From positions 15,438,001 through 15,502,000 of the forward strand of contig OZ116699.1 of assembly GCA_964199315.1 (NCBI GenBank): a stretch of DNA of 64,000 bases, given 5' to 3'. The notes below the pieces were generated by a model. It saw nothing but the letters and a program-made list of their open reading frames with translations. It was not told where the DNA came from and did not search any database. Below are positions 1 to 62,480 of this stretch, piece after piece. The position numbers were made by a program, and so were the translations under genes. This stretch comes from Orbicella franksi (Eukaryota). The first letter of the stretch is position 1; every line of letters starts with the position of its first letter.

Positions 1-5916
<5,916 letters not shown>

Positions 5917-25069: not shown

Positions 25070-28000
25070 CTAATTATGGCTGCCGAATGTCGCTTTCATC
25101 TTCTTAAAGGCATCATGGAATTTCCTAGAGCCATGTGAAGATGATAAATGAAAGTTGCTTGCGTTCTCAGAAGCTAGGGCGTGGAGGTTTTCCTTTTTGC
25201 ACTCGTGTATACGCTGTTTCAGTCTGTCCTTCAATTCGTCGTCTGTTTGGAAGGCATAACGCATCTGTTTAAACAAGCGTATCTGGTCCACTAAACGAGC
25301 CGCTGATCTGTAATTGAAACAAAAACAAGTTGAGTAATCAGTAGCCTGCGAACGCAGACGTATTTCTGGCTCTCGCTCGTCTCCTCCGAAAAATAACGTC
25401 TGCGAACCCGAGCCAGGAAACGATTTCTCCGACGTAGGAATTTTAAGCCAATCACAGTTTAGCTCAAGTAGCCCCAGAACTACTGCGCGAGGTATTCGCT
25501 GCCAGGAGCACTCGAGTTTCATTTTATCGTGGAATCTGATTGGCCAAGGAGAAACAAAAGTCATTACGTCACAGAAATCGTTTCCTGGCTCGGGTTCGCA
25601 GACGTTATTTTCGGTGGAGACAAGCGACAGCCGGAAATACGTCTGCATTCGCAGGCTAAGTAATCAGTCTCCTACTTGTTAAAATATCAGAAACAACAAT
25701 CTAGCTTAAAAAGGCGGGTGTTTGGTATGACATGTCGCCGGTTAGAGTGCAATCATCAAAGGAAGTCATGTTCCTCTTTCTTAAGTACAGAATGAATTAA
25801 GCTACCGTATTTTCGCTAGAGCTTTTTTCACAAGAGGTGAGCGACATGAAAAGGTGGGAAAAGTTGTCAAAACCAAGACGTGGGTTATTGTAGTTTTCTG
25901 TCACATTGGCCTATGACAGTTCCCTTGACAGGGTCATTCAGTGCAAATTTCATAGTTGCTCTAAAGACATAGAAAAACCCACTAACTCAAACTGGCTATT
26001 TTAAAACAGCAGTTTCATAACTGTTCGCTACCGTTATAGAGAAAGCTGTATACATAAAGTGAGAATTGAAAGGGAAATTTTCACCTCTTTGTGATACAAC
26101 TTGGGAAAGCTCAAGACGCATGACAGTGGTCACAGGACACCCAACAATAATGGTCTGACCCAGAGGTGATAAGGACTAAAGATTGCGAGGAGGAAAATGG
26201 ATGGCAATACAGGAAAACCTTAAGATTTCTTCAAAGTCCTTGAGAAACGAGATTTCCTTACAGAACTGTTCAAGAGAATTCGTGTGAGTTCACGTCATGT
26301 TCATTCGACAAATCCATGTAAGGTTTTTTCGTGAATGGTCAAACATTGTAAGGCACTTGTCTCTTTACCTCATCTTTGTCCACTTGAACATGTCGTTAGG
26401 TAATGTGAACCCTCCAAGCTCCTGCTGTTGAACGTGAATAACAAACAAAAGGAAACAAGGAATTGTGGGTTTGTCACGTGACGCTTCACTCTTCATCAAC
26501 CACGAGCTGTCTGTCTTCAGCAAAACCTGAAATAGAGGACAACACAACTGATTGAAATTTTTTACGGTGGTTTAGATAGAACTAGATCATTTGTTGCCAA
26601 AGCGAACTGCGCATTTCTTTATAGATATCTTACAAAAGGCATTAGGTTTGTCAGGGTTAAAACTTACCTTGACGGCCTTAAGTTCTTCCAATGCTTCCGC
26701 TGTTTTTGTGGGAACCTGTTTCCAAACCTACCGAGCAATTAATATGTTATTTGTATAAATGTGTTTCTTATTATTATTTAGAGACATTTTAATATATGTT
26801 TGCCTAAGAGATTAAAGGGCGCAACTAGGGGGCTGATAACTTATTCCAAGACGTCACAAATATCACTACAAATAAATATTTAACAGATTAAGACAAAAAA
26901 CAAATGTGTTGAACTCTTTTACAAATTGTTGAACGTTATTCAACCAAACTCCATTCTATCCCGCAGCAACCACGTTTGAATTGCCAATACCACGTGACCA
27001 AGTAAACTACCAATAACAGCGCAAATTACATCCAATGATACCACAGCTACAAAGCAACAACTATCAATGATTGGGTAACCTACCGGTAACTGTCTGATGA
27101 CAAACATTTCCAGGGCGTCAACGATTTGGAAACACGTGCTGTAGTTACGAATCTCACAGCAGTAACGCGCAGCATTCACAAACTTGGTGATGAGGGCAAG
27201 TTGAGCCTACAACACAACGGTACAGAAAGATTTGTTTGCAACTATATCATCTGGCATTCGATTACTTTATGGATTACGTGACACATATTGCAGTAAATAG
27301 TCTAATTATATGGCTTGCTCCGTGAGCGGGCAAGATGAACCGAATCCTTTGCTGTGATTGGCTACCCGAGCGGGCAAGATGAGGTTATCTTGCCGGCTAG
27401 GGATTACCCGCTGTGTCTCGCAAGAAAATTGTGTTCTTTTCCAAATAATAAATCCTTTATTGACAAAGCTTGCTTGGTAAAGATGGCTGGATATTGGCCT
27501 CGTTCCTTTTTATGCATGTTTATGGACCTAGAGTCCTTCTCAGTCCATAAACACGCCAAAAAAAGAACTTGGTCATTTTCCAGCCATCTTTACCTCACGC
27601 CTGGTCAATAACCCATATCAAGAGAATAGGATCATAATCTATTGCCCAAATATAATTACCTTTATTGAAGACGCACTGCAGATCTCAACAGCCACCCACA
27701 AGGACACGTCTTGCGCATGTTCCAAGAGGTTTTCCAGATGGCCATCGGTGCTGGGCTCGCTGACGTACATATTTTGCTCCCAAGGGAGGGGTACCTCCCC
27801 GGAACTGGCGGGTAGCTCCGAGACGCGCCGACTCCCGGTACTGAAGCCAAAGATGCTGTCGCGTTCTCTGCTGGGGGACTGGCTCCGACCAACACCAATG
27901 CCATGCGCACGAGAGTTTAGGAAATGTACAGGGTGAATGTGAAAGAACAAGTCCTGGAACAGAATAAAAGATATATGACTCAGTGAAGTGTATTCAAGTG

Positions 28001-30494
28001 TCTTTTGGGGTCGAGTGAATTAAGTGAGAATGAACTGAACAAAGATGGCATCTTGTAAGGCAAGGCCAGAGTAAAAACGTTCAAGTTTCCCTCCCATCTG
28101 CCTATTAAATGAACTATACGAATGGCAATTATCCAAGTACGTTTTGGAAGACGATTTTCCAGAACTGGTACTTCTTTGCGCGTCTCCAATAACCTGAAAG
28201 CTGTTTTCTAGAGGGAACGCCCACTCCGGTTTTTTGAAAAAACGTTCATGAAAAACACCCTTTTAAAAGATGCCTGTGTTTTCAATATTATTGAGTATAC
28301 ATGTCACCTGGAGGTCTTGGTAAAACGCCATGTGGTAGGCGCTCAGGGAGGGATGAAAGAGAGATGTCATGGCGTGCAACAATATAATACCTTGGAACTC
28401 TGGTTAACTTTGTAATGTACTCTGTCAAAATTGAGCAGTCTTTTACCTGCTGTATAAGTGCAAGTTGCTCGGCCAGGATTCGTGACGAGTGGTCCAGAAC
28501 TGAAAGAGCCTTTAGGTACAGGGTTGGTTTGTATGTCATGCCTTTCTCGGGCGTGGCTCTTCGGAAGCACTGCACTGGTGATTTGGACTTGCGGCTACCC
28601 ATTGGCTGCCAAAAAATAATAAATTAACGTTAAAAATCTGTTGACTCCAATCTGAATGTTTTCTTGTTGAATATACCTTTCTTATTAGTGAGTCCTTTTT
28701 GCCGTCTACCGGGTTAAGACCTGAAAGGAAGGAAAAAGAATGTTAAATATCTATTGTCTGCTAACACATTTTTAAATTTGTTCTCGAAAACGTTTAAACA
28801 GTGTACAAGAACGTTTCGATACCTTGGGGGTCCTCTAGCTGCAGTACAGCCACGAAATCACTGGGTTCATCTGACCATATGTTATTGTTTGAATCCCTTT
28901 TCTGTTTCTCTGCAATAAGTTCCATCAAGTAATGACCTCTTTCGCTTCTATCCACGAGAATCAACTGCGATAAAGTAAAAAGAATATGATTAACACGATT
29001 GAATTTCCTAGTCCGACACTTGTCTTTCCGGCCTTTTGCATGGTAGTATGTCTTGTACTTATGTTTGTGATGTAATATCCACATTTATTTTTTCTAAGAG
29101 GGTACGGTAACAAATCCTGCAATCTGATTGGTTCTTAGTGCGGCCCGGATTTTCCTACGATGCTGTTGTGTGTGGAAAAGGTCAACAATTATAAAAGTGA
29201 TTCGAGAGAGAGAGGAAAAAATAAATATGTTATTTTCCGGCTTAAGGTCAGTCTGCATAGTGAAAAACTTGACCTCGTATAGTGAAAAACTGCTGCCAAC
29301 GGCCTGCGGTCTCGGGTAGCATTTTCAAGACATCGGTCACAGTCTTTCACTATATGGACCTCTTAGCCGGTAAATAACATACATGCAGACCATGTAGTAT
29401 CCGGTTTCGGGGAAACGTTACAGTTCTTCTCTCTTTTTCTCCTTGCATGGAGGCCGGCCATAAGATCAGATAAAATCTCATTAGGAACAACGTGTCAATA
29501 ATGAGCCGTAAGGTCGCTTTGCCTAAGACTAAAAGGACCTGTAGGAAAGTAGGCAAGAACAAAGTGAAATCTTACCTCATCTTTAACAAATGCAAGCAGC
29601 TCTTTGATAAGACTGGGATTTGTTTTAAAGTCAAACCGATAATAACCGTCAATCCACTCAGACAACAGGTCCAGAGCACGGTATCGGATCTGAAGCTGAT
29701 GGTTATACACCTGGCCAGAGGAGTCCGTTCTGACGAGATAAACACAAGTGTCATTTAATACCTCAAACCAATGCTGTATCAGGCGTAGCCGGATGAGAAC
29801 ATTTGCGACACGTGTTCAGCTTCACTGCACTTTTGCTGTGATTCGAAGATTTAAAGAGAAGATGGGGTTTGATTGGCTACTTGGTGCGATAAGGGGCTAA
29901 CGCCTAACACTCAAAACATCATCTACTTTTACCTAAAATAGTTGTCAACTTATTCTAAGTTATGCGTATTGGTTTTAAACGTGTCAAAATTCGTGTTTCA
30001 ATCACAAAGAGTTTTCCCTCTCTCAACCTCATTGTTCATTTTTAAAGGAGTCAATGTTCATAAAAATATAATCTTAAGTTGAAGCATAACCTTATTGTTC
30101 TCCGTCCTTACCTTAGAGAGGCTGAGCATTTTTCTCTGATGAAAGAGAACAGTTCTTGAGCAGTGGAAACGTAACGGAAAGTGTAAAGAAAGTATCGTAC
30201 ATAAGCCTGACTCATGGCGTGTCTGAAATAACAAAAATATATACAGTATCTCTGTTAGTACCAGGATCATTCGTAAAGCACAGCAAGAATAACGAATCAA
30301 ACAGATTTTGTTTTATTCACCTGTCGAAGAGATAAGAGAACAAGCCAAGTTTGGTCCCTGATTGAAGGGAGGGGCCAGTTAGTGACTCATCCACGATATC
30401 TGTGCTTTCATTCACCCTCTGGTTCCATATCGGAGAAAAGTTTAAGAAGCTATTATTCAACTCCGGTACTAACGTCACACAGCTCTTGTTATAG
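25070..30494 (-). CDS. KNDC1: REM (RasGEF_N) and CDC25 RasGEF domain exons of KNDC1
   Basis: [103 protein letters not shown]...PTIPCFLLF. All junction phases are consistent. Confidence 0.92.
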
Positions 30495-33400
30495 CTACAA
30501 AGAGGGGAGAAATACACACACAAAATATCAGTGGTTTTCCTTCATGACAGATGGAATTGCTTGTGTATGTTAGAAGACATTAGAGGAACAATCTCTTTCA
30601 ATTTACCTCACAAGAAATGAATACAGTAGCGATGTATCTACTCCAAAGCGCTCGGCGTACACACTCTAAAAAACAAAAATATAGCAACTGATTAAAATAT
30701 TTGTATCGGAACCGAACATACTTTAGTTGAATAAAACTCTTGTAGCAAATTCATTACTGAACAGTTTTTATGTTTAGACCGTGCTGATTGTTTAGCCATT
30801 CTATGCCGTACGTTAAATTTCCACACAGTAAAGTAAAGACAAAACTCATACTCACCCTCAATTGCCGTTGAACATTTTTTAAGTAAATAATTTTCTTATC
30901 ACATTCCTCGATTTCGTTGACCAGTTTAGAGGCCAGGTCTTTCACATCTGTAAAAGACGATACACACCAGATCAATACCGCATTCCTATTTTGGGTTCTT
31001 CATAAGGATTTGGGTTTACTTAGTCACATCCCATGTCCGTTGTAGTTTATGGTCTTGTATCGTGATGTCCAAGTCAGACTTCAAGTGTACAAAGTTAGCT
31101 CAACACACCTTTCTTATTCTCCACATCCGCCATCTTGTTGTAGGAATTCATGCTCTTTTTCTTAGCTCTTCGCTCCAACATTAGCTGCTGAGAGATTTCC
31201 TGGAAAAAAATGATTGATTAAGCTCTCGCATGTGTTCTGGATTTCACGTGACATCTGTCCGAAAATACATTTTTAGCTGTAGTTAATACGACTTGCGGTG
31301 TAATGTGGTGTTCACGATGAGTAAAAATAGAGCGGTTTTCATTTGAGTATCGAGCAGTAATTGGTTTTACATCAACTAAGCTACACGATTGGCTTGAAAA
31401 ACTCGCGCCACTTTTTCATCCAATCAGAAGTAAAATCAAAACTAATCGTGACTCACTCTCACGCGTTTTCCCGCGCTACATGTTATTCCTTCGAGTTTTG
31501 ATTGGTTCACTGGATTGTCTTTGTCCTTTGCGATTGGCTAGAGTGATTACTTTAGTTTTGGTTTTTACGGCACTCAATTGAAGACTGTGCTAGTACAGCG
31601 ATTTAATCTAAACTCATGAAACCGGTGTCAATGGCGGGATGTCTCCCGGGCCAAGTCACAAGTGCTTTTAGTTTTGCTCTTTATTTGCCGAGAAAGAAGA
31701 TATCATCTTCGCTTTGACTCCATCACAAGCACACCATCTTTGTCCTGATTGGCTGAGAAGACACTATCTGCGCGCCCATTGGTTTACGCGAGTCGTGCAA
31801 GCTTCCTGAATTGATTACTTTTCAAATACAAGCGTTAGCTCTGCTTACAAAGCTAGTATCTTACCATAATTTTAGTTCCCAGTTTTTCCGTCAGATCCTC
31901 CACGCTCGTTGCCAGTTTGACTCCCTGAGTGGGTAGAATGACAAAATGGTTAAAGGAGCTCAGTCACGGTATTTTGAGTTATTTTGGCGTACAAAATTAC
32001 CGCTATATTGAGGGAAACCTGAAAATATTAACCACGATAGAAAAAACACTAAAGAGATAACAATAAACCATAAAGGAACAAGGATGGTTAAGTAAGGATG
32101 GAGAAGATTACCACGGATTACAAACGACGAACTGGACAAATCTAGGCTACGCTTTTCAAGATGCGCAGCTCCTTTAATGGTTAGGTCATAAGCATCTGAA
32201 CAAGAATATTCCACAATATGTCCAGCAAACTGTCTATATATTCATTGAACGTCATTATTAACATCATACAAAAGAGCCAGGGCGCATGACAATATGATGG
32301 TAGTTTTTTATCCAGCTCACCAATTCTTCAAATACATAAAGAAATTAAATTTATGAGGAAAATCTAAAATATTTTTAATTTCTGTGTTAGCCTAAATTCC
32401 AACAAGTTAGCCCCATGGCTATTAACAGTGTGGTTTCCTTGTAAAACATGTATCGTCATAGCGACAGGATAAAATCCGAGGATTTTGGAAAGCTCAGTGT
32501 TCTATTTATCAAGTAATCTAGTGCCTGGACTATCCAAGACTGGTTAAAAATATTACATTTGTGGATAGCTAAGTATTTCCAATACACCGTAAATATATAT
32601 ATCACTGCATCTTTTTGCTCACCATTACTCTGTGATAGTCGTCAAAAATAGGTGTTAACAATTCTTGGATGTCCGCTTGCATTTCAGGAGCAATAATTTT
32701 GATGGGCAGAAACTCGGTAGCTTCTCCTAGCGGAGACATGAGAATGTCCTTCGCCCCAGTCCCGCTCCTCTCACTGCTGCTTCTGGAGATGGAGTTAAAA
32801 TACAAAGGCTCCAGACTGAGGTGGGATTCCTCGCGAGACAGGTTGATAGACTCCGGAGGGCTGATGTCACTGACAGTGCTCTCAGAGAATTGCAAGGTTG
32901 GCCTGTTAAAAAAAGAAAACAATTCTACTGTCACGTACACTCTATACACTGTAACATGGCTAACAAAGCCCCCCAAAAAGGTTTCAAGTAAAATGTTGTG
33001 AACTTTAATTTCATGAGACGATAAACTTAACGAACTGTTTTTGTTATCACGTGAGTTCATAACCCAACGTTAATACCAACAGTGTTGAGTTTTACCTTAA
33101 CAAAGACTTGGTGCTCGCAAGCAGTTACTTATATACGGTATTTTCAGTTGTCATTTGTGAACGATTCTCAAAACGAAAGGCAATTTTGATGAAAAATATT
33201 GCTGAAACTTTGGATAAGAGGACTTTTGTAAACTACTTAGTAAAACTGTACTTTCAAGACCTAGAAATACTATAAAGACCGTACTATTGACTACGCGTTA
33301 CATGAGAGAAGAAGAAGTTCCATTCTCAAAGACTGTGGCATTCATACATGTGTGCGGCTGAATGAAGGAAAAAATATCGAAATCTTGTAAGTGGCCTCAA

Positions 33401-36400
33401 GAAGTTGAGTTTGATGTGACAAACCTTCTACTCTGTTCTCCGCCTGTGACAGCTTCGTACATATCATGAAGAAGGTCCTCGTCCCAATACAAATCATTGT
33501 ACTGATCGGTAATGGCCTCTTTGAAGTTTTCCTCGCTCATTCCGGCCAAAGACAGCACATACTCAGCTATAAATACAGTGAAACGGATGTTGCTTAGAGA
33601 TAACAAGATTTTGTTAAAGTTACCCGGACCACCGTGCTATATGGTAGTCAAGTCTATATTGCTTGGTACATAACTTGTCGTATTACCTTCGACTGTCGTT
33701 CCCATTTCTTTCATGCACATACATGAAGTAACGATGAAATAAACTCTTTGGCAATATTAACGACGATATTTATCGATCAGGTTGTTATTCAAACAACAGA
33801 TTCACTTATGAAGGACAGAGAAAAGTAAAACTATTCCTGAATATTTGAAAACGTGGTTTAAAACGTGCCAGGGTTGTAAATCACCACAGGAAACTGCTGA
33901 AACACTCGACAACGCGAGAGACCATGCAATAAGTTGTTTTGACACCGTGTTTGAGTAACAAATAAATCCAGCAAATGATGGGTTATGTGCGTCAGACGCT
34001 GAGTCTCCTTTGTATTGTTAAATGGATTTCTGATTCAACAAATCTCTTGGGACGAGCCTCGGCAACAAAATAATATGCAAATTTTCCACGCTTGTTTTGC
34101 TGTTTTCGATCATAAAATTGCCTAAATTCATCAATAATTTTTGAACCAATAAATTGTCAGTGACGTTTAACATGAAAAATTGAATTAATTCTACCGCCCT
34201 ATCATTATCCATCGAAACAACACCTAAAATATGCCCTTGACAAAATAACCAGCTCGTGCCAGATGATTCTTGACATTGTACCTTTCAAGAAGTTTACAAA
34301 TCTCCATGTTAGACCCTATTTTTGAGCATCCCTGCCTTCCTTCTTCGACGACACCTTCTCCAGTCTAACATTAACAAGTATGGTGCTCTTTGTTACAGAA
34401 AGTTCTCGACAAACAGCTTTCAAAATGGTTCTTTTTTGGTACGTGCCCGCATCTTAATGAAGTCAGCTGTTTTTGTTAGAGTGGTAGCCAATTTGCTGCT
34501 AATTGGCTGTTTAATTGTACACGAGCTCACAAAGGGTCGGTCAGGAAGGTCTTAATTAAAACACATATTGTGTTTCGGATTTGTAAGTGCACAAAACTGA
34601 TGGACAGGAAAACTTAAGTAACTTAATTAGCCAACCCACCAGTGCCTTCGTACACCTTATTACCTTAACGCACGTAATCACACAGAAACTGCAGAGTAAA
34701 GCAACGACTTGTAAAATGAATAACTTCTCATATATTAGTATTGATAATGGCTCCTATCTAAGTGATTGAGAAGTTGATGACGTAGGTAGAGCAAATGACA
34801 ATGATTGTCACAATGAATTGGACCACAAAACAAAAGCAATATTTGAACGGCTACAAACAAACATTGAGGAAGACGTTCGCAATATTGTTTTCTGTGTTTT
34901 TAGTTCAATCTTTGACAACTTCAACAGCGTTTTAAAAGGTGCAGGAATCGTAATTCGATTCAAATAAATTGGCAATTTTTGTCGTTTGGAGAGACCCTAG
35001 AAAAAAATCAGGTTTCAACTTTAATTCAGCTGAAGTTGGCCATCGATGTGGCTTTACTTGAAAATGCAAAGGAGAGTCAGCTGCCTCTTAATCTAATTAC
35101 TTTATTACTTGATTTCTATAACGATGACCCTTTTAACCCCGCACAATTACTAAAAACAGAAATATAAATTTTTTCCGGATATCGGGAAAAAACATATTAT
35201 TCAACGAAGCATTTTATCACGTGCAACACTTCAGGGCTTTCGCGAAAAAGAGGATGAAACACCTTTTTTTGTTTAGAACGCTACCGCACGGTCAACCTTA
35301 GATGACATAACGTGCACCTATAAAAAAGGAACACGCATATTTCTTACCCATATTGACGTCTTCCACTCCATCATCCATGTAGCCATCAAATGCAAACTCG
35401 TCGTGTATCATGTCGATAATCTTGGAGAGAACACCCTTCCCCTCTGACGAAGACACACTGGAGGACAACACCTTTTGACGACACAGTAAAAGACAGTGAA
35501 TCTATCGTTAGGTGTTTGTTATTTTCTAGCCGCTAGAGTTATACAGAGGACGCTTGACCCTATTTTCTATTTAGCAAATAAATTCCATGTTGCCTTGCGT
35601 CTGTCCAGTATTATCACAGAGGACGTCGAAATGTGGTATGTTCTTACAACATTTTGAAGTCTCCCTACTGTGATCTATTACTGAACAGACGCAAGGCAAC
35701 ATGGAATCTATCTGTTTTATGTAATAAAGAACCAAAAAAATGTTAATGACGTCATCTATACGAATGTCCTCCAACAGAGAGAGCATGAGAAAGAACCAAT
35801 CAAAATACGAGACTAATTCGACTTATTATATAAATGTCTAAATACAGGGACTAGGAATATATTGACAATCCAGCTGCATGACCATGTTGTGTGGGTTTTC
35901 ATTTCTGAGTTGGTCCTTAGTTCCTAAGAACGGATTTGGCAAGAAAATAAGATAGTGTCAGAAAACCTATAAGGTTCCACGAATGATCAAGAAGCATCAT
36001 CTCTTTGCGAGTAACGTATTTTTCCCAAAGACCCGACACGACAACCGTGGCCAAGCTTGGTCTCCATGGCCGAATCTAAAATTATAGACCTGCTCAAATG
36101 GTGAAGACAGAATTACACAAGGACTCTGCACTAGACTAGGTGGAGTATAACAAGTGTGGCTATAAGTCTAAGCTCAGTTTTTACACCACAGCTTTGGCTT
36201 AAATCCTCATAAACTTTGTTTTACGTACTAACTGTAATGTCATTGTGCCTTGCACTTCAAAGTTGAAAAGGATAAAAATTGCCTCACTTACCTCGGGCGA
36301 AGAACTCTCATCCTTTGAAGCATTACTGGGAGAGATAGTTGTTTCAATATCGACCACAGGAAACGATCGAGGGCTAACAGCAGAAGCAACGTCTTCTTGA

Positions 36401-54400: not shown

Positions 54401-57400
54401 AAACGCATGCAGTAACTTGACAAACTGCGCTTGAACGTTGTTAGAGAAAATGGATTAGTGAAGTCCAATTACCTCTTAGCGGTCTAGACATGTGGTTTAT
54501 CAAAGCACGAAAGTTTCAGTGACTGACCTCCGCTTCGTTAATCATAAACCTCGCAAGACTGATTCATACTTTTCGCACGACACAAGTTTTGAAAACTGAA
54601 TGCCACAGCTCTTTTGAGAGTATTCCGTGTGGAGCTGGGTGGAAAAACAGTGGGACTACAAGTTTGCAAAATACATGAGGTCTAAGAGTCGATGCAACAA
54701 ATCCCATCTGCGCATTAGATAACTACATAGTACTGAGCACAATATCTTAGCAAGATGGAGATCTTTTCCACAAAAACCGCAGTTAAGTACACTGAGAAAA
54801 ACTTCTTTTTCACTAACTAAAGCGAGAGCGAAAATTATAAAACAACATCGAATGATGAGTTCAACTAGCAGCTTAACTGAAGCCAAGGAGAGCACTTCAT
54901 ACATAATACAACGACCGCGATTGAACGATGTGTGCTTTAAGCTTTACTTGCTGCAGCTTTCGACCCGATTCACTCAACTCAGAGGAAACGTATAGGGAAC
55001 ACAACATTACAGTTCTCCTTAAAATGAAAATGATTCGCTAGCAGTCCGTGAAAAAGACAAAGCACATACCTTGGTCCACGAGTTAATCACATGCGTTGTT
55101 TTCCTTTTTGCTGACGATCACAACGACAGTCGGATGAAAATCACGCTAAATTGACTTTGCGTTGATGCAAAGAAATGTCATTGTCCATATCACACATGAT
55201 CTAACAACATAATCATCTACCAAATGGTGTTAGCCGTGTCGGACTTGATACGAATTATTCTTCAATCCCAGACGCCTGGGTTTCTCACTGGCTATTTTGC
55301 ATGTGTTTCGAAGTTCCTGTGGCATTGGACAATATGATGGTTTCCACTGATGTGTCACAACAAACTCATAGGTGACCTCAACGAAATGATATGTCTTTCA
55401 GTCGCATTTGCCTCGAAGGCAATGTTAAACGTTTCAAATTTTTCAATATATAGTTTGTTAATGCATGATGAGTCGATAAATTTTGAAGCTTTCACTGCTA
55501 CATCTTACACCATTTTTGTTGTCATGGAAGTTCTCTCGGTACACACAGTAAGGAGAAATTCTTATAACTCTACTTCCAAAATACAGAGAGCTCTTTATTA
55601 TGCGGATATCGACACAATTGGGTCCATGTGACGCTTAAGTCAATACTGACAAACTACTATCTATCCACAACACAAACAGTTTGTCTTCAAGGACAGTTCC
55701 TGACTTTATACACAACTATTCCTCATATACAGCAATCTCCAGTTGGGTCTCTCTCTAAAGGGTTTTGTTCGACTGTATTTACACAAAAACAGTTGAGAAG
55801 CCGAGAGTATCAGACCATGTAGCTATTACTGTCAAAGAGCATGTCTCAACAATTACTAAATTTTCTCACCTTCTCGGATGCAAACTTGTTAGAGTATTCT
55901 GGAGCCAGGAATAGGTCATCAATAGAAACTCCTGCAAGACAAGTGTCAACATACAACAATTAACGGATTGATAAGCTCATGTCAGTTAACACGTCTCTGA
56001 TGTCACAACCTTAAACAAGATTAAGAGTTTCAAAAACTTCTTTACATAGTCTAGTAAGTGATATCATAAAGCCTCTCACCAGACACGAAAACGCCGCAAC
56101 CGTTGAAATAAAATTGTTGAATAGCCGATGGTTTTGATGTGAAATGGATATTAAATAAATATCACGTCTAGAGCTGCTTTCTATGAAAAACTGAAGACAT
56201 TTTGAGCTTCACAAATTGCGGGCACCTCTCGGACGGAACCTGCGCAGATTGTCTACGAAACGAGATTTGAGAAAGCACGATACACTAGGATTTGAAGAAT
56301 ACAAAAGCATTAGTTACAATCAAAAGACAGCCTCTAGATACAAAATCTCGCCATTAATAACGTAACTACGTAACTAGAGATTTTCTTGGCAGTGCTTGGG
56401 TGTAGTTCATTAGAATGAAGTCAGCTGAGAAGCCAGTCGTAAGAGAATCGTGAAGAAATCTTTGTCTGTGTTTGCAGCGAGCACAAGGATTGTACCTAAT
56501 TACCAGCTCGTTAATGGAAGGACCGTCTTTATACATTCCTAATGTGCCCTCTTTGTGCACAGGGAAAGTTATTTTTAGCACACAATTCTTCAGCTAATCC
56601 CTCTTGCTATACAAAAGACAGCCTTGATTTCAGGCACGTTTAAAATAACCTAACTTATTTGAAGAGCTGCTAGCAATTTTGCAGAATGCTTACTCTGGAA
56701 AATGTTCTTACCATGGTAAAATGGCGTCGGAGGTCACAATTACCTTAAATGAACAGGCTAAAGGTGTACATACTGTACATAAATAAAACATAAACATACT
56801 GACAACCTAATTAATATACAAAACAAGGGAAACCTCTTTCAAACGTTTATATCAACGGATGGCCAAACACGCCACTAAAAGCAGTATCAATGAACAATGG
56901 GTTAATCAAAACAAGAGTGTGTTGACTGCCTGTTAAACGTTAAGGTCAATACACTCACTTCAAATCCAACAAACGTTCAACAGATCTAAGCTGATACACA
57001 GTTACTTCTGAAGCATGTGCTCTTCTCACACTCAACCCCTTTGAAAAGTAGCTCCACTTTCAAACAACGTGAAAAATACTTCTTGATTTTGCACCATCGA
57101 AATGAGCACGAACTATCAAACAACGCTTGAAAAGAGTCTTCGCCATTGTTTAGTACAACTTGAAAGTGACTGAGCAAAACAACTCAGGGGAAAACAGTAA
57201 AACCAATTTAGCTCAAACCAGAATGGACCTATTGTTGTGTAAATCTAAGATTCTATTTCAAACGCGATTATAATGATTCGAACGCTAACGCGAGTAATGA
57301 GCTTAAGGTCATTCCCCAGTATTGCAATGCGCATCCCTACTGCGCATAATTTAACGCGTGCATAGCGCGCGCGCATTAAAAAATGGCGGCTTTTTCTTTA

Positions 57401-60400
57401 CAGCTGGACCTCGCCATAGAGGTAAATCGTCATTTTCTCGCAAACGAGTATGGTGACCTAGCATTTTTTTCTGTTGTTTTGAATTGAGTATTAAATTTCT
57501 CTGTGTAAAATAAATATGGACCAATTCTCAGTGTAGAACAAAAAACAATCGTCGGAAACGTGAATTTGGCAAGCAATCGTGACTACAGTCATGGTGCTAT
57601 TCTAAGGATTTATTGGGTATAAACAAGGTGCATAGTGATTGATGCGACTTCAGCGAAAACAAGTGCTCATTGTTGATTCACGTAAAAGAATCTTAACTAA
57701 TGATTCTTGCTGTTTATATTGGTCCTTGAACTAATTTCAGTTTTGATTTATGTTTTTATTATCTTTGTCCCAATGCGAGGAGGTTAGTTCTCGAACTGGA
57801 AGAGAGCCTTCTTCTTCTACACCGTCTCAACGAGTTTCGTAAAAAGGAGAGGTTGCATGGCAAGATCTTAGGCGAGGTTGCACAGCGTATCAATCATGTC
57901 TGGTTGCTCATCTTTTATAGCTGTTCCATGACGGTAAGGAAAGCAAGTAACAGTCAAAAGAGCGTTAAACCCGACAAGTTGACAGAAGTCAAGCTCTCTT
58001 TCGTCCAGCTACATAATATTCCATCTGAACATCTTAAGATTCCGATTTAAACCCGGTAAACAAACAGGGAACTTAACGCTTTCCAAAGGTCGCAAACTTA
58101 GTGCGTACAAACCTGTGCTGAGGTGCTTGAACTTGATGGTACCACTTGGGTTGATGATTACGGTTTCCAGGGACACGTAAGAAGCTGAAAAAAGAGACAT
58201 TAATAACCTGAACTGCTTGGGTTGACCGTCGCTTTAGTAACGCGGGAGTCATGAGAACCCTTTGAAGCTCACAAATTTTTTTCCGAAGCCTCTTCATAAT
58301 TTCTCAAATAATCATTTCTATCTTTCCTTCACGTCAACTATCCATCACTCTCTGTCAGCAATTCATAAATATTACATGCACTCAAGCCATTCACCAAATA
58401 AACATTATTCTATTCTCAGCCAAAAGAAACGAAGCCATCATTAATTGATTCGGCACCGATTACAGAACCATTACAGTACCATGTACATGTGGCTTCCAAC
58501 TCTGATTGGCACGATAGGCTTCTTGTTATTAACCGGTTGTCTTATAAACCGACCCCCACCCTCCCCCTCCCCCCTCCCCTCTTCCCCTGGGAAGACCGCT
58601 TTATCTTTTAATTGTTATCTACACTTACGCAAACTTCCCAGCGCATCCAGGGTCCGCAACGTCTTGGAACACTCTTTGCAAATGGCGACCAACTCTACTT
58701 CAGTCAAACAGGAAGAGAGGCCGTTCAACAGCTCTCGGATATTCACAGCCTTCACAAAACACGTCAAAAATCAACTTTATTCCGGCAATCAGGATTAACA
58801 TTCTCTTTATATAATTTCTGTAATTTTCGGAGATTTTCTGATCATGCAAGTCCTTCATAGCTCCTGGTCTGCCTACTTGAATTTGTTATAGGAGGTAAAA
58901 AGAAAGTCGACTTTAAATCCCCGAATCGTAACATAACACGAGTAAAATTAAATATTTGCTTTCAGTTAGAATGTTTATGTCTTTCCCCGGCTTATCATTG
59001 GTATTCAGCCTTACGATACAAAATTGGGAGGGAATTGGGGAAAGGTATCAGTTCTTATAAGTCTAATTGGGCAATAACGAAAATACATACTGAACGGTTT
59101 ATAAATACCTTTCTTAATAGACTTAGTTTTAGATATAAATTAGCAACGTAGATTTTTCAATTTCTTGTCTTCTTTAATGCAATTTTAATTTTAGCATTTT
59201 CAGTCAATTTTTTTTATCGTAAGGGCCTATTAAATATTCTAGCTAATTCTACTTTGTAAATTTTGATATGTATTTTTATCCAATGAATAAAGACATTATT
59301 ACATTATTATTACCACTACGATCAATAATTTTAACGTACCTCCTGTCGTACCGGTGCACGAAGGACAGAACTTTCGACAACCGTTCTTATCCTCTCAAAC
59401 TGTGCTGCAGACGCTGGTATACTGTTGCTACCACTAACGCTCTCTGTATAAATCTTCGATCTTCTTTTCGTCACACGAGGGACAATGCTTTGCTTTCTTC
59501 TGGGACCCATTTTTCTGTTCATCAGCTTTGCGAGAACATTTGTTCTCGACTGTTGGGATGGAGAGTCGGGTCTTAAGTCAAGAGCTGTTTTACCGGCATT
59601 AGCCATAGAAGAAATGTCCCCCACTCCATCATTCTCTACTTGTATTTTGGCAATACTGGGTGTAATATTGTTATTCGCGTCTACGTTAGGACTATTCTCG
59701 ATGCTTTTCGTCCTGCTTGTTGTTTCCATGACGCCCATCAATTCTTTCCCACTCACGTGGCTGTACTCACTACTTGTGACTGTACGTGGTTCCAAATTAA
59801 TACCGTTTACTTCGCTGTCTGTTCCTTGCTTACCTCCATCTTTGGCAGTCAATGTACCTTCGATTGAAGCAACACGTTTATCAGATACTCGATGAACTGC
59901 AAATTGTTGAAGTGGAATACTTTCGACAGTTGTCCAGCATTTCGATTGGGTTAATTTATCGTCAGTGTTTGGGTTTTGTTCACTCTTTTCGGAAGGTTTG
60001 GAAGAAGGATCTTGTGTTTTCTGCTTACTGTCACTTCCCTCGAGTTTCGCCTTCAAAGAAGCATACCTCTCGCTGAGTGCCGCAAACCTTTCCTCCGTGG
60101 GAAGGGAATCGTTTAGAGGCGGCTGTTTCGGAGATATTCCAAGTTTACGCACGATCCCTTTTCCACCTCCACCATGAACAGTGACTCTCGAACTCATTGT
60201 AATGGTCGAATTAGTCGTGGCTGACTTACTTGCCTCTGTTTTTTTGATCCTGGAATAATCATCAGCCTCCTCCTGGCTTAATGGAAGGAAACGCGAATTA
60301 TCGAACCCCACACCACTTGAGTGTTGGTAATTCGGTTGATTTACCCTCCCTTCTGTTCTTCCAGATGTATCGTTTGGAATCACAAAGGTGATAGGAGGAC

Positions 60401-62480
60401 GTTTAATCACGTTGACACTGCTCTTCCTTTGAGGAGGCGCAACGCTTCTCGCAGGAAGTGGAGCGCTGATTTTTCTCTGCGGAGACTGCACTCGAGGAAC
60501 ATCCATACTCTCGCTTGCAACCAGTTGCCTGGGCACGGGAAAATTAACGTCACCATCGGCTCTAATGTGAGACTTTTCCTTGGACTTGCTAAGTTCAGAT
60601 GGACTTGAGTCTTTGGCTGTACCTTGCACTTGATGATTGAGAACCATACCAGGGCCATTTGAGTTGCGCATATCGTCCGATGGGCCACATCTCTTTGCAC
60701 TATCTTTTGATTCGGTGTTAATGTTGTTACCGTTGACGCTATTGCTGTTGCTGTTGTCGTTGCCCTTGTTGTGTTTGTTTGACAAGGAATCCTTGATAGA
60801 TGCTGCTGTGTTCAAGACGGATGATTTACGATCGTTTTCGGGGTTACTTTCATTTCCCCACTCTCCAGTGTCTAACGATTCTCTCAAGGAAAATTCCAAA
60901 GTTCCTGTGGGCGGCTTGGTAGAAGCAATGGAATTCCTCCGCTTCCGCTGCATAGCCTGGCTGTGGGTGATCACGTGTTGCTGAACGATAGCCAGCAGAC
61001 CTTTGGGACGAGCTTCACTGGGTGACCCCTGAACATCTTTGGAATTTGGCACCTCTGGTCCAATGGGTGACCTCTTCTCTGATTGAGCGTCATCAGTTTC
61101 GCATTTAATGGTCAAAGCAGATAGCGACGGGCATCTTTTAGCTGAGTTTGGAGACAGCGTGTTGAGGACATTTCCAATGGAACCCCTTCTAGTTAGAGCC
61201 GGGCTTTTTAATATCCTCCCAAGAATGCCATCTTTGTCCTTGCTTGGGCAGTTGCATTTGCGCTCCTTTTCAGCTGCAGGTTTTAAAGACGTTTTGATGC
61301 CAACAACTTTGGATGTTGAGCTGCCAATTTGAGGAGAAAGCGTACGCAAAACGTTTCCAAGAGAACCCCTACGTTTTAGTAAATTGGGAAAATTCATTAT
61401 TTTACCAAGAGCATTTTCGCTTTCCTTCTTAACCTGACTCTCAATTTTAACCTGTCTTTGGATACTTGGACTTTCATCACGTTCAATTTTACCTTTGTTG
61501 AAGTTCAAAGGAGAAAGTGGTCTCCATGGATCTTTTACGTGACCATTTGCGTGTGGCAATAGAAGTGCTGAACTGAGTTTTCCATCGTTGCCAGGTGTTT
61601 CTTCTCGACCATGATCGGATTTCTTGTCGAATTGAGGCGACAGTGATAGCAGAACATCACTCAAAGACCCTCTCCTGGTTAGGCGAGGAGATACAAGAAC
61701 CTTTCCAAGCATGCCTTCGTCGTTATCGGTATTCTTTGCGGAGGAACGGCGCGACCCTGGTTCTGACCCTACCTTGCAATCGCCATCTTCGGGTGATCCA
61801 TTCAGATTTATTGATACACTTGCAATGCTGCTTGATCGACGAGATTCTACTACGGGATTCAGGGAGGTTATTCGTTCTAACACTTCTGGGTCAATCACAC
61901 TCCCTCGTCGAGATCGATGAGGGGCCATGGATGTGTCAACTTTCCTGAGCATCTCATACAGAGCTAACTCTTCGTCCCTTGTTTCTTTGGAGCTCTCCTG
62001 AGGGAAGGACGACCCAGTGGTCGCCGGAGAAACATCACCAGTATTGCAAGCATCGTCACCTGCATCATCTGTGTACGACAGAACGTATGTGGATACAGCC
62101 TCTATTAAATGCTCATTGTCCTCTGTGGAATTCTCGAAAGAGAAGCATCGCTTATAAAGTGGAGATTCGTCTACATTGCAATCACCGGAAGAAAAGGCTA
62201 TCGTGCCATTTGCTGCGCTAGTGGATTCGACATTCTTAGTGCCTTCGTAGTACTCTTGCGTGGGTTCACAAGGCGGTTCGCTCGCAGCCCTCGACCTTAA
62301 TTCTCCCTGTTTAAAGCTACCAGTTGAGCGTCGTCGCTCTTTATCCGTGTCTTCCTCTTCGGGTTTTTCCGGAATATCGTGAAGAGTGTGAAAGAAACGT
62401 ACATCGGCAATGCTATGTCTCCTTCGTCTTGGCCGGGACTGTAGACTGGCGTTGTTTAGAAGGAACTTTTTCAGATCCAT
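25070..62480 (-). CDS. KNDC1: very-KIND / kinase non-catalytic C-lobe domain-containing RasGEF, about 3,800 aa
   Basis: Exons (high to low): 59340-62480, 58629-58749, 58113-58184, 55870-55931, 48922-49080, 48232-48333, 44322-44420 (probable), 36292-41391, 35348-35471, 33425-33566, 32623-32902, [unresolved junction], 32122-32195, 31865-31924, 31109-31199, 30856-30947, 30607-30665, 30321-30494, 30112-30222, 29576-29729, 28823-28964, 28677-28720, 28447-28605, 27660-27953, 27084-27206, 26668-26727, 26369-26526, 25070-25307 (TAG). KNDC1-specific segments: [25 protein letters not shown]...[58 protein letters not shown]...[15 protein letters not shown]. Confidence 0.88.
25342..25658. mobile_element. 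Long-TIR MITE, 317 bp, 9-bp TSD (MULE-like)
   Basis: About 90-bp TIRs starting tagcctgcgaacgcagacgtatt and ending aatacgtctgcattcgcaggcta. agtaatcag is duplicated at 25333-25341 and 25659-25667. Confidence 0.9.
27297..27620. repeat. Probable interspersed repeat in a KNDC1 intron
   Basis: Internal direct repeat gagcgggcaagatga and internal inverted agatggctgga/tccagccatct. Resembles a recalled common anthozoan repeat; only one copy in the window. Confidence 0.55.
31328..31592. mobile_element. MITE, 265 bp, TAG..CTA termini
   Basis: Ends tagagcggttttcatttgagtatcg and cggcactcaattgaagactgtgcta are imperfect inverted repeats. Same family as 8807-8891. Confidence 0.75.
35576..35713. repeat. Palindromic MITE fragment
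   Basis: attccatgttgccttgcgtctgtccagta pairs with tactgaacagacgcaaggcaacatggaat. Confidence 0.8.
36292..41391 (-). CDS. KNDC1: 5,100-nt internal exon of KNDC1 encoding 1,700 aa of Ser/Pro/Arg-rich, probably disordered sequence
   Basis: Open frame throughout (ORF track 36199-41259). Acceptor tttttccag at 41392, donor GAG|gtaagt at 36291, phase 0-0. The next exon continues into the conserved FAFDGY segment. Confidence 0.88.
48232..58749 (-). CDS. KNDC1: KIND domain exons of KNDC1 (5 exons)
   Basis: The spliced peptide [56 protein letters not shown]...[60 protein letters not shown] matches the KIND consensus. Phases 0-1-1-0-0-0 are consistent. Confidence 0.9.
48747..48839. repeat. Short palindromic element
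   Basis: gagacgaagtcgagggaaacatcg pairs with cgatgtttccctcgacttttcgtctc. Confidence 0.8.
55093..55630 (+). pseudogene. Possible decayed rhodopsin-class GPCR, antisense within a KNDC1 intron
   Basis: Frame-shifted segments [14 protein letters not shown] (TM1-like; GN position mutated) and [15 protein letters not shown] (TM2 LAxxD motif, 55230-55247), followed by hydrophobic stretches with stops. Confidence 0.3.
57307..57400 (+). mobile_element. Left end of a Kolobok-like element related to 13634-14276
   Basis: ttaa|ggtcattccccagtattgcaatgcgcatccctactgcgcataattt aligns with the first ~46 bp of the 13634 copy. The right end was not identified. Confidence 0.6.
58553..58587 (-). other. G-rich tract with G-quadruplex potential
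   Basis: The minus strand reads GGGG-AAGA-GGGG-A-GGGGGG-A-GGGGG-A-GGG-T-GGGGG. Confidence 0.6.
59340..62480 (-). CDS. KNDC1: First coding exon of KNDC1: 1,047-aa low-complexity N-terminal extension
   Basis: ATG at 62480 with an in-frame upstream stop and an acceptor at 62540 (5'UTR intron). Donor GAG|gtacgt at 59339, phase 0, matching the phase-0 start of the first KIND exon. The splice link is inferred. Confidence 0.75.

What the first reader, a model, noticed from the sequence alone, without database searches (positions are those of the whole stretch)
25070..62480. Giant very-KIND: about 3,800 aa with one KIND domain and two huge single-exon disordered regions
The model is more than twice the recalled length of human KNDC1 (about 1,750 aa, two KIND domains). 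Here a 1,047-aa region precedes a single detectable KIND domain, and a 1,700-aa region separates it from the conserved C-terminal half. No second KIND was found. This suggests a distinct scaffold-type RasGEF architecture, reminiscent of giant-exon neuronal isoforms.
Basis: partly seen in the sequence, partly recalled or inferred. Interest (0 to 1): 0.72.

Follow-up and report, generated by a model that had tools for sequence, protein, structure and literature searches.

The report
Giant coral very-KIND (KNDC1) RasGEF gene
This is the stony-coral version of the Ras activator very-KIND/KNDC1, whose longest reading frame (3,776 residues) is twice the vertebrate length because one KIND domain sits between two huge unstructured stretches; the layout is shared with sea anemones but has not been studied.

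Summary
On the minus strand, 25070-62480, I rebuilt a 26-exon coding model with all introns GT..AG: 11,331 nt, 3,776 aa.

- **Layout:** exon 1 has 1,047 codons, five small exons encode one KIND domain, exon 8 has exactly 1,700 codons, and a conserved C-terminal half carries RasGEF_N and RasGEF.
- **Family:** outside Cnidaria, all 115 listed hits to the C-terminal half are KNDC1/very-KIND or unnamed look-alikes with KIND, RasGEF_N and RasGEF.
- **Both giant exons are real coding sequence.** They stay open and conserved in many corals. Exon 1 has dN/dS 0.32. Both align in order with the 3,966-aa Nematostella RefSeq model. AlphaFold2 predicts both as almost wholly disordered.
- **Transcript evidence:** an RNA contig splices exon 1 to exons 2 and 3.
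- **Single KIND:** no second KIND exists in the window or elsewhere in the genome. Mollusc, amphioxus and vertebrate KNDC1 all have two.
- **KIND2-type:** the coral domain scores 134 bits against KIND2 and 71 against KIND1. It shares four or five intron positions with abalone KIND2. Mouse KIND2 is the MAP2-binding domain.

Caveats: a related coral's cDNA starts at an alternative first exon, conserved here at 46970-46872, giving a KIND-less product of about 2,590 aa. RNA word shares hint that the long form is rarer. No single molecule spanning all 26 exons was seen.

Verdict: a new variant of a known family, of moderate interest.

The parts
59340..62480 (-). Coding exon 1: ATG at 62480, 1,047 codons. 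N-terminal disordered region with conserved islands: the N-terminal [18 protein letters not shown], three RRGS repeats, [26 protein letters not shown], and the last ~90 aa before the donor.
   Evidence: ORF, with an in-frame stop at 62517-62519 just upstream. ORFs of 1,006-1,237 aa with the same start and end in at least five other corals. dN/dS 0.32. RNA contigs cover 59343-62478. AF2 mean pLDDT 35.5.
58629..58749 (-). Exon 2, start of the KIND domain.
   Evidence: Splice joints 59339|58748 and 58629|58184 in RNA contig of run X2. Junction scoring. KIND2 profile 23 bits on this exon alone.
58113..58184 (-). Exon 3, KIND ([23 protein letters not shown]).
55870..55931 (-). Exon 4, KIND core ([20 protein letters not shown]).
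   Evidence: Matched by the Oculina, Nematostella, Montipora and Actinia models. GT..AG.
48922..49080 (-). Exon 5, KIND.
   Evidence: KIND2 profile 52 bits. Pfam KIND 15 bits..
48232..48333 (-). Exon 6, end of KIND.
46872..46970 (-). Candidate alternative first coding exon: 33 codons ([11 protein letters not shown]...), GTAAGT donor in phase 0, in-frame stop upstream at 46994. It would join exon 7 and give a KIND-less isoform of about 2,590 aa.
   Evidence: Homologous to the 5' end of cDNA contig L005 of a related coral, which joins it to exon 7. Not tested with reads of this species.
44322..44420 (-). Exon 7, linker.
   Evidence: Contiguous with exon 8 in cDNA L005.
36292..41391 (-). Exon 8: 1,700 codons, the middle disordered region (S 18%, P 10%).
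   Evidence: 38 conserved coral and anemone homologues, 98-36% identity. Held at 0.75-0.92 of its sampled words by 14 RNA runs, including polyA libraries. AF2 mean pLDDT 31.6 over its first 1,200 aa.
35348..35441 (-). Exon 9, start of the conserved C-terminal half (KNDC1-specific block, aa ~2952-3049).
33425..33566 (-). Exon 10, KNDC1-specific conserved block.
32623..32902 (-). Exon 11.
31865..31924 (-). Exon 12.
31109..31199 (-). Exon 13.
30856..30947 (-). Exon 14.
30607..30665 (-). Exon 15.
30321..30494 (-). Exon 16, start of RasGEF_N.
30112..30222 (-). Exon 17, RasGEF_N.
29576..29729 (-). Exon 18, RasGEF_N.
   Evidence: Pfam RasGEF_N 22.5 bits on this exon's ORF alone..
28823..28964 (-). 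Exon 19.
28677..28720 (-). Exon 20 (44 nt).
28447..28605 (-). Exon 21, start of RasGEF.
27660..27953 (-). Exon 22, RasGEF, with a cnidarian insert of about 20-25 aa.
27084..27206 (-). Exon 23, RasGEF.
   Evidence: Pfam RasGEF 25.9 bits on this exon's ORF..
26668..26727 (-). Exon 24, RasGEF.
26369..26526 (-). Exon 25, RasGEF helical hairpin ([10 protein letters not shown]).
25070..25307 (-). Exon 26, the conserved C-terminal tail (..[15 protein letters not shown]..) and the stop codon at 25070-25072.

Best explanation
The locus is the coral orthologue of KNDC1/very-KIND, a Ras-family guanine-nucleotide exchange factor. Its longest isoform has 3,776 aa, laid out as follows:
- a 1,047-aa disordered N-terminal region in one exon;
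- a single KIND domain of the KIND2 type (aa 1047-1209, five small exons);
- a 1,700-aa disordered region in one exon;
- the family's conserved C-terminal half: a KNDC1-specific ~95-aa block, RasGEF_N, a RasGEF/CDC25 domain with the family-typical hairpin H-x-Q-Q-x-E-x-G, and a conserved tail.

Shown: the gene structure, orthology, coding constraint on both long exons, predicted disorder, the single KIND, and splicing of exon 1 to the KIND exons.

Inferred by homology with mouse v-KIND (PMC2064798): the C-terminal domain activates a Ras-family GTPase, and the KIND2-type domain tethers the enzyme to a cytoskeleton-associated partner.

Inferred only: the two long regions act as flexible, phosphorylation-regulated docking stretches. 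They carry short motifs conserved between corals and sea anemones, several of them basophilic-kinase sites (RRGS, RRNS, RRHS).

An internal promoter probably also makes a KIND-less isoform of about 2,590 aa that keeps the 1,700-aa region and the GEF half.
For: - **Model:** 26 exons, all GT..AG, open 11,331-nt CDS.
- **Orthology:** the C-terminal half of the Oculina orthologue hits amphioxus, abalone and vertebrate KNDC1 at E 1e-147 to 1e-98. All 115 listed non-cnidarian hits are KNDC1/very-KIND or unnamed look-alikes. The window model aligns to them at the KIND, the ~95-aa block and the 640-aa GEF half. The hairpin and tail motifs are conserved from coral to mouse.
- **Pfam:** RasGEF_N and RasGEF on window exons, and full-length in Oculina. 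KIND scores 32.3 bits on the cut Oculina domain, against a cut-off of 26.7.
- **KIND type:** the window model scores 134.2 bits against the KIND2 profile and 71.3 against KIND1. The ML tree puts cnidarian KINDs on the KIND2 side. Four intron positions and phases are identical to abalone KIND2, with a fifth one column off.
- **Exon 1 belongs to the gene:** a spliced RNA contig shows 59339|58748 and 58629|58184, and RNA contigs cover 59343-62478 in two studies. The start codon and donor are conserved in at least five corals. dN/dS is 0.32 at dS 0.93, and the KIND exons follow the ORF in another coral. The Nematostella (3,966 aa) and Actinia models carry the same N-terminal region in order.
- **Exon 8:** 38 homologues, high word shares in 14 RNA runs, and a related coral's cDNA joins exon 7, exon 8 and the GEF half.
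- **Disorder:** pLDDT below 50 for 935 of 1,047 and for 1,159 of 1,200 residues.
Against: - No single read or contig spans all 26 exons in this species.
- Junctions 48232>44420 and 44322>41391 rest on orthologue models and a related coral's cDNA, not on reads of this species.
- The Oculina RefSeq isoform X1 (2,817 aa) starts at an internal Met about 95 aa before the end of exon 1. Montipora X2 starts just before exon 4.
- Runs that hold 0.76-0.81 of exon 8's words hold only 0.15-0.33 of the 5' stretch. The polyA runs with 0.9 of exon 8 are not among the listed holders of the 5' stretch. The long form may therefore be rare, or coverage may be 3'-biased.
- KIND2 orthology is not statistically secure: AU tests do not reject the alternatives (p 0.14-0.15).
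- GEF activity, the GTPase target, the KIND partner and any scaffold role are untested.
Confidence: 0.8

Rival explanations
1. The main product of the locus is a shorter protein, and the 3,776-aa form is a minor isoform. The shorter forms would be a KIND-less isoform of about 2,590 aa from the internal first exon at 46970-46872, and/or forms starting downstream as in the Oculina X1 and Montipora X2 models. This adds to the best explanation rather than excluding it.
For: cDNA contig L005 (8,070 nt, 2,609-aa ORF) of a related coral begins with MTQSKMAAPV.., has in-frame stops upstream, and joins directly to exon 7. The window keeps a homologous 33-codon exon with a GTAAGT donor in phase 0. RefSeq models in Oculina and Montipora start downstream. 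RNA word shares are much higher for exon 8 than for the 5' stretch in the same runs: X4 0.76 vs 0.33, X6 0.76 vs 0.27, X11 0.77 vs 0.17, X13 0.81 vs 0.15, X14 0.76 vs 0.14.
Against: About 28% of the 5' query was intron, so its attainable share is only about 0.72. Long mRNAs are usually under-covered at the 5' end. In run X2, exon 1 contigs (depth 3.5-5.7) and the spliced exon 1-2-3 contig (4.7) have similar depth. Purifying selection on exon 1 shows that the long form matters. The alternative exon was not tested with reads of this species.
Confidence: 0.35
2. The 5' ORF (62480-59340) is not part of the protein: translation starts at an internal Met near its 3' end, as in Oculina X1, and the rest is a 5' leader or a separate gene.
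For: The Oculina RefSeq X1 model starts at a Met aligned to window aa ~954. No annotated or assembled protein in the searched libraries carries both the whole N-terminal ORF and the GEF half for a stony coral.
Against: An ORF of 1,006-1,237 aa with the same MDL[KR].F..N.ASL..RP.RRRH start and the same donor is kept in at least five other corals. dN/dS is 0.32 at dS 0.93. Motif islands are conserved in order with Nematostella and Actinia proteins that include this region. RNA contigs reach 62478 and stop before 62577. ATG 62480 is the first ATG after an in-frame stop.
Confidence: 0.07
3. A second KIND domain exists but has diverged beyond detection inside one of the long regions.
For: Bilaterian KNDC1, including abalone, has two KINDs, so one might expect two here. 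Nematostella's single KIND scores only 13.6 bits with Pfam, so Pfam can miss such domains.
Against: KNDC1-specific KIND1 and KIND2 profiles run without filters find only aa 1047-1209. They find nothing in the other 3,600 residues, in either strand of the window, or in the long regions of 58 orthologous sequences. A KIND1 profile over the whole genome hits only exons 2 and 5 of this gene. AF2 finds no folded domain in aa 1-1047 or in the first 1,200 aa of exon 8.
Confidence: 0.03

Closest known systems
Vertebrate very-KIND / KNDC1 (mouse v-KIND, 1,742 aa; PMC2064798, PMC5338823)
   Same: Orthologous C-terminal half (31-33% identity over ~640 aa), with RasGEF_N, RasGEF, the same hairpin motif and the same C-terminal tail. 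A shared ~95-aa block lies upstream of the GEF region. A KIND domain is homologous to KIND2. The order is KIND, disordered linker, conserved block, GEF.
   Different: One KIND instead of two, with no KIND1. A 1,047-aa disordered region takes the N-terminal place. The linker between KIND and the conserved block is ~1,740 aa, against ~230 aa in mouse. There is a ~20-25-aa insert in RasGEF. Total length is 3,776 vs 1,742 aa.
Invertebrate bilaterian KNDC1-like proteins (Haliotis rufescens 2,338 aa; Branchiostoma 2,426 aa)
   Same: Same family. The KIND2 exon structure is nearly identical to the coral KIND: introns at alignment columns 14, 56, 102 and 155 with the same phases. The middle region is also encoded by one large exon (544 codons in abalone).
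   Different: They have both KIND1 and KIND2. Their middle linker is 550-680 aa, against ~1,740. They have no long N-terminal disordered region.
Nematostella vectensis LOC5521079 isoform X2 (3,966 aa, RefSeq 'uncharacterized protein') and Actinia tenebrosa LOC116304067
   Same: Same overall layout and order: ~1,300-aa N-terminal region, single KIND, ~1,700-aa middle region, GEF half. Motif islands are shared.
   Different: Only islands of the long regions are alignable (28-37% identity). These are automatic models without any published study.
SPIRE KIND domain (own genome, contig C12, L001)
   Same: The only other clear KIND domain in this genome: Pfam KIND 121 bits.
   Different: It belongs to an actin-nucleator gene with WH2-like and FYVE-like parts by eye (not scanned). 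It scores only 9-14 bits with the KNDC1 KIND profiles.

Membership tests
KNDC1 / very-KIND RasGEF family | C-terminal RasGEF_N plus RasGEF (CDC25-homology) domains. | tested here: met
   Pfam RasGEF_N (22.5 bits) and RasGEF (25.9 bits) on single window exons. Full domains at 54.6 and 82.2 bits in the Oculina orthologue, which is 77-96% identical to the window over most of these exons. PDB sequence matches to Epac2, SOS1 and RasGRF1.
KNDC1 / very-KIND RasGEF family | Closest relatives outside the clade are KNDC1, not other RasGEFs. | tested here: met
   All 115 listed non-cnidarian hits to the C-terminal half are KNDC1/very-KIND or unnamed look-alikes with KIND, RasGEF_N and RasGEF, at E 1e-147 to 1e-98. 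The window model aligns to them in order. A formal reciprocal search from a vertebrate KNDC1 into this genome was not run.
KNDC1 / very-KIND RasGEF family | Family-specific motifs: the ~95-aa block upstream of the GEF region, hairpin H-x-Q-Q-x-E-x-G, and tail SRKF..K.KATF. | tested here: met
   Alignment of coral, Nematostella, amphioxus, abalone, lamprey, gar and mouse sequences. These features are my own reading of the alignment, not a published definition.
KNDC1 / very-KIND RasGEF family | Two N-terminal KIND domains (KIND1 and KIND2), as in the published description. | tested here: not met
   Only one KIND (aa 1047-1209) with Pfam, KIND1, KIND2 and combined profiles. 113 of 115 bilaterian KNDC1 sequences have two or more matches to the iterated KIND profile. 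I therefore file the gene as an orthologue with a variant architecture.
KNDC1 / very-KIND RasGEF family | Exchange activity on Ras-family GTPases, and binding of a partner through KIND2 (MAP2 in mouse). | not testable with these tools
   Known for mouse only (PMC2064798).
KIND domain (Pfam PF16474) | Match to the family profile above the curated cut-off (26.7 bits). | tested here: inconclusive
   Window exon 5 alone scores 15.4 bits. The joined window domain could not be sent to Pfam because joined exons have no reference. The Oculina orthologue scores 26.1 bits in the full protein and 32.3 bits when the domain is cut out. Nematostella scores 13.6 bits. Homology to KNDC1 KIND domains is not in doubt: 134 bits, E 2e-43, with a profile of 109 KIND2 domains.

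The most novel reading that the evidence does not exclude
The ancestral very-KIND had one KIND domain of the KIND2 type, and KIND1 arose later by internal duplication in the bilaterian stem. Hexacorals instead grew two motif-studded disordered arms, carrying repeated RRGS-type sites conserved between corals and anemones. These arms would make the protein a giant phosphorylation-regulated tether for Ras signalling. An internal promoter would switch between a tethered (KIND-containing) form and an untethered GEF.
Probability: 0.25. Interest if true: 0.55.

Novelty: new variant of a known kind. Interest (0 to 1): 0.4.

Why it matters
Very-KIND is known almost only from mouse cerebellum. There it links Ras to MAP2 through its second KIND domain and limits dendrite growth. 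An early survey of Ras regulators placed KNDC1 mainly in bony vertebrates, with putative orthologues in a choanoflagellate (PMC3141262).

This locus shows that the gene is present and under constraint in corals and sea anemones. They keep only the KIND2-type domain, and its exon structure has been stable since before cnidarians and bilaterians split.

This gives a simpler, single-KIND natural version in which to ask what the KIND2-type domain binds in animals that may lack vertebrate-type high-molecular-weight MAP2. It also offers a clear case of lineage-specific growth of disordered regions within single exons. It does not change any principle.

Tried and rejected
- **Pfam on single exons and the two giant ORFs:** nothing for KIND and nothing at all in the giant ORFs. 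This is uninformative for KIND, because the domain is split over five exons.
- **Weak KIND-like hit on contig C4:** Pfam 15.3 bits, KIND2 profile 16.9 bits. I scanned 40 kb around it. Only a short Cys-rich peptide, repeated nearby, matches and no further KIND exons do, so I rejected it as chance or a repeat.
- **Profile of the ~90 aa before the KIND domain:** it found nothing in 115 bilaterian KNDC1 sequences, so it gives no positional evidence for KIND2 orthology.
- **AU tests:** neither 'KIND1+KIND2 form one clade' nor 'cnidarian KIND goes with KIND1' is rejected (p 0.144 and 0.151). Loss and gain of KIND1 therefore cannot be told apart.
- **Raw-read polyA runs X23 and X24:** zero and five reads on the 5' stretch, so no test.
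- **Amphioxus gene structure:** P0060 and P0063 are not on record for DNA look-up. Only abalone could be compared.
- **Literature:** two searches found no paper on cnidarian KNDC1.
- **Not done:**
  - Pfam on the joined window protein. There is no reference for joined exons, so I used profiles built locally instead.
  - Folding of the last 500 aa of exon 8.
Full report
**1. What is there**

The window is AT-rich animal DNA (about 32-47% GC in 2-kb windows) from a 497-Mb coral genome. The minus strand carries two very long ORFs: 59331-62480 (1,049 aa) and 36199-41259 (1,686 aa from its first start codon; 1,741 aa stop-to-stop, 36202-41424). Both are rich in Ser, Pro and charged residues, and neither has a Pfam match. 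Small ORFs between 25 and 30 kb carry pieces of RasGEF_N and RasGEF.

**2. Gene model**

- The long middle ORF has 38 homologues in corals and anemones, at 98-36% identity.
  - Three are long annotated models: Oculina patagonica LOC144643172 X1 (2,817 aa; KIND, RasGEF_N, RasGEF), a Montipora model (2,593 aa) and a Desmophyllum fragment.
- I laid the Oculina protein on the window and scored every possible GT..AG pair against it.
- This gives 26 coding exons with canonical splice sites and an open CDS of 11,331 nt, or 3,776 aa, from ATG 62480 to the stop at 25070-25072.
- Exon 1 has 1,047 codons and exon 8 has exactly 1,700 codons.
- Exon 4 (55931-55870) encodes the LAPEY core of the KIND domain. 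The Oculina, Nematostella, Montipora and Actinia proteins all match it.
- The next gene downstream, from about 22.3 kb, is a MAP65/PRC1 homologue on the same strand. The 3' limit of the gene is therefore sensible.

**3. Is the 5' exon part of the gene?**

*Transcript evidence*
- In RNA run X2, one assembled contig skips 58185-58628 and 58749-59338, with CT..AC ends (GT..AG on the minus strand). It therefore joins exon 1, exon 2 and exon 3.
- Contigs of two runs from different studies tile exon 1 from 59343 to 62478. Nothing lies between 62577 and 62975.
- In X2 the introns next to exon 2 have no depth, which argues for RNA rather than contaminating DNA.

*Comparative evidence*
- A whole-library phmmer search with exon 1 finds ORFs of 1,006-1,237 aa in at least five other corals. 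All start MDL[KR].F..N.ASL..RP.RRRH and all end at RAPVRQE, exactly at the donor.
- Against one of these (58% protein identity), dN/dS is 0.32 at dS 0.93. In that species KIND exons 2 and 3 lie 550 and 890 nt downstream of the ORF.
- The Nematostella RefSeq protein (LOC5521079 X2, 3,966 aa) has about 1,300 residues before its KIND domain. It aligns in order with the window model through the N-terminal islands, the KIND, the islands of the middle region and the GEF half. The partial Actinia model agrees.

*Start codon*
- ATG 62480 is the first ATG after an in-frame stop.

**4. Exon 8 and the other junctions**

- Fourteen RNA runs from many studies hold 0.75-0.92 of exon 8's sampled words, including polyA libraries.
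- A Logan RNA contig of a related coral (L005, 8,070 nt) carries a 2,609-aa ORF, so it cannot contain introns. It is contiguous across exon 7, exon 8 and all the GEF exons.
- The 48232>44420 junction rests on the Oculina, Montipora and Nematostella models and on its canonical, best-scoring splice pair. I could not lay reads of this species on these junctions.

**5. Disorder**

- For exon 1, folded with a seven-species alignment, AlphaFold2 gives mean pLDDT 35.5, with 935 of 1,047 residues below 50.
- For the first 1,200 residues of exon 8, folded with ten species, it gives 31.6, with 1,159 of 1,200 residues below 50.
- Only short isolated helices appear, and several coincide with conserved islands, for example aa 795-813 ([19 protein letters not shown]). 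'Disordered' is thus supported as a prediction.

**6. Family**

- The C-terminal half of the Oculina orthologue finds KNDC1/very-KIND and nothing else among the listed non-cnidarian hits. Amphioxus is 38% identical; abalone and the vertebrates reach E about 1e-100.
- The window model aligns with them in three places: the KIND, a ~95-aa block (aa 2952-3049) and the last ~640 aa.
- The RasGEF hairpin reads H-V-Q-Q-Q-E-L-G-G. It differs from the SOS and RasGRF1 hairpin, but it has the same form in every KNDC1 from coral to mouse, as does the C-terminal tail. The catalytic module is therefore family-typical.

**7. One KIND, and which one**

*How many*
- An iterated profile shows two or more KIND matches in 113 of 115 bilaterian KNDC1 sequences, including abalone.
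- Separate profiles of 109 KIND1 and 109 KIND2 domains were run without filters. The targets were the joined model, every ORF piece on both strands of the window, and 58 cnidarian sequences. They find a single domain, at aa 1047-1209.
- A KIND1 profile over the whole genome hits only exons 2 and 5 of this gene.
- Pfam KIND over the genome adds only a SPIRE homologue and one chance hit.

*Which type*
- The domain scores 134.2 bits with the KIND2 profile and 71.3 with KIND1.
- Pairwise scores go the same way for amphioxus (124 vs 74), mouse (77 vs 54) and gar (82 vs 58). They are even for abalone.
- A maximum-likelihood tree puts the cnidarian KINDs on the KIND2 side and the SPIRE outgroup on the KIND1 side, with support 83/61. 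AU tests do not reject the alternatives (p 0.14-0.15).
- Intron positions give independent evidence.
  - I mapped the abalone gene (L010). Its KIND2 has introns at alignment columns 14, 56, 102, 155 and 188, with phases 0, 1, 0, 0, 0.
  - The coral KIND has them at 14, 56, 81, 102, 155 and 189, with phases 0, 1, 1, 0, 0, 0.
  - Abalone KIND1 has 83, 102 and 187, with phases 1, 0, 1.

*What this means*
- The coral domain has the KIND2 gene structure plus one intron that survives only in KIND1.
- This fits a KIND2-like ancestral domain. It cannot decide whether KIND1 was lost in hexacorals or gained in bilaterians.
- In mouse, KIND2 is the domain that binds MAP2 and anchors the protein to dendritic microtubules (PMC2064798).

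**8. How unusual is the size?**

The distance from the KIND2-type domain to the ~95-aa block varies widely:

| Species | Distance (aa) |
|---|---|
| Mouse | ~230 |
| Gar | ~335 |
| Abalone | ~550 |
| Amphioxus | ~680 |
| This coral | ~1,740 |

In abalone this stretch is also one large exon of 544 codons. The single large exon is therefore old and the coral has expanded it. The long N-terminal region has no bilaterian counterpart; its last ~90 aa find nothing in bilaterian KNDC1.

**9. Isoforms**

- The cDNA contig L005 begins with a short first exon (MTQSKMAAPV..) that has stops upstream, and it joins directly to exon 7. That isoform lacks both the N-terminal region and the KIND domain.
- The window keeps a homologous 33-codon exon at 46970-46872, with a GTAAGT donor in phase 0 and an upstream stop at 46994.
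- RefSeq models start inside exon 1 in Oculina and before exon 4 in Montipora.
- Runs holding 0.76-0.81 of exon 8's words hold only 0.14-0.33 of the 5' stretch. The polyA runs richest in exon 8 are not among the listed holders of the 5' stretch.
- This may reflect a more abundant short isoform or 5' under-coverage of a >11-kb mRNA. I cannot tell which.

**10. Mechanism**

*Shown*
- The gene structure, orthology, constraint, predicted disorder and single KIND.

*Inferred from the mouse protein*
- The C-terminal module activates a Ras-family GTPase.
- The KIND2-type domain holds the enzyme on a cytoskeletal partner.

*Inferred only*
- The long regions act as flexible docking stretches.
- They carry short islands conserved between corals and Nematostella: three L-x-RRGS-h-x-x-VL-x-x-LSP repeats, [51 protein letters not shown], two S.[IL]SKF motifs, KP.NYF.NV.F and DNY.KRFE.
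- Several of these islands are basophilic-kinase sites.

**11. Novelty**

Automatic RefSeq models with this layout already exist, as 'uncharacterized protein' in Nematostella and Oculina. Two full-text searches found no study of cnidarian KNDC1. An early survey placed the family mainly in bony vertebrates (PMC3141262). I rate this a new variant of a known family: correct, well supported and of moderate interest.

Noticed in passing
The motif is kept in all aligned corals, and one copy aligns with Nematostella (ILKRRMSLGDVLNSLAPR). AF2 puts short helices on them. They look like phospho-regulated docking motifs.
   Followed up: partly
window 46872-46970 (-): Conserved alternative first coding exon: 33 codons, a GTAAGT donor in phase 0, and an in-frame stop upstream at 46994. 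In a related coral's cDNA (L005) the homologous exon starts a KIND-less 2,609-aa isoform.
   Followed up: partly
window 63079-63522: RNA contigs of runs X1 and X2 cover this stretch upstream of the start codon, after a gap with no cover at 62577-62975. No joint to exon 1 was reported and there is no convincing ORF. It could be a 5' UTR exon or an unrelated transcript.
   Followed up: no
window ~20076-22348 (-): The next gene downstream is a MAP65/ASE1 (PRC1-type) microtubule-bundling protein. Four exon ORFs hit PF03999 at 25-44 bits.
   Followed up: partly
L001 (G000:C12:21505184-21508783, -): A 657-aa open frame holds the only strong Pfam KIND domain of the genome (121 bits). It is followed by WH2-like and FYVE-like parts by eye (not scanned), so it looks like a SPIRE actin-nucleator homologue largely in one exon.
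   Followed up: partly
window 27660-27953 (-), model aa ~3505-3530: The coral and Nematostella RasGEF domains carry an insert of about 20-25 aa (..[24 protein letters not shown]..) that is absent from bilaterian KNDC1. It includes another RRxS site.
   Followed up: no
L010 (Haliotis rufescens KNDC1-like gene, 76 kb): Abalone KNDC1 has a 37.8-kb first intron inside KIND1, and a 544-codon exon for its middle disordered region at the position corresponding to coral exon 8.
   Followed up: partly
G000:C4:28637404-28637652 and 28654430-28654555 (+): A short Cys-rich peptide (..LVFTVCFQCLRSLSSCCK..) occurs twice, 17 kb apart, and weakly mimics the start of KIND. It is probably a repeat, not a KIND exon.
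   Followed up: yes
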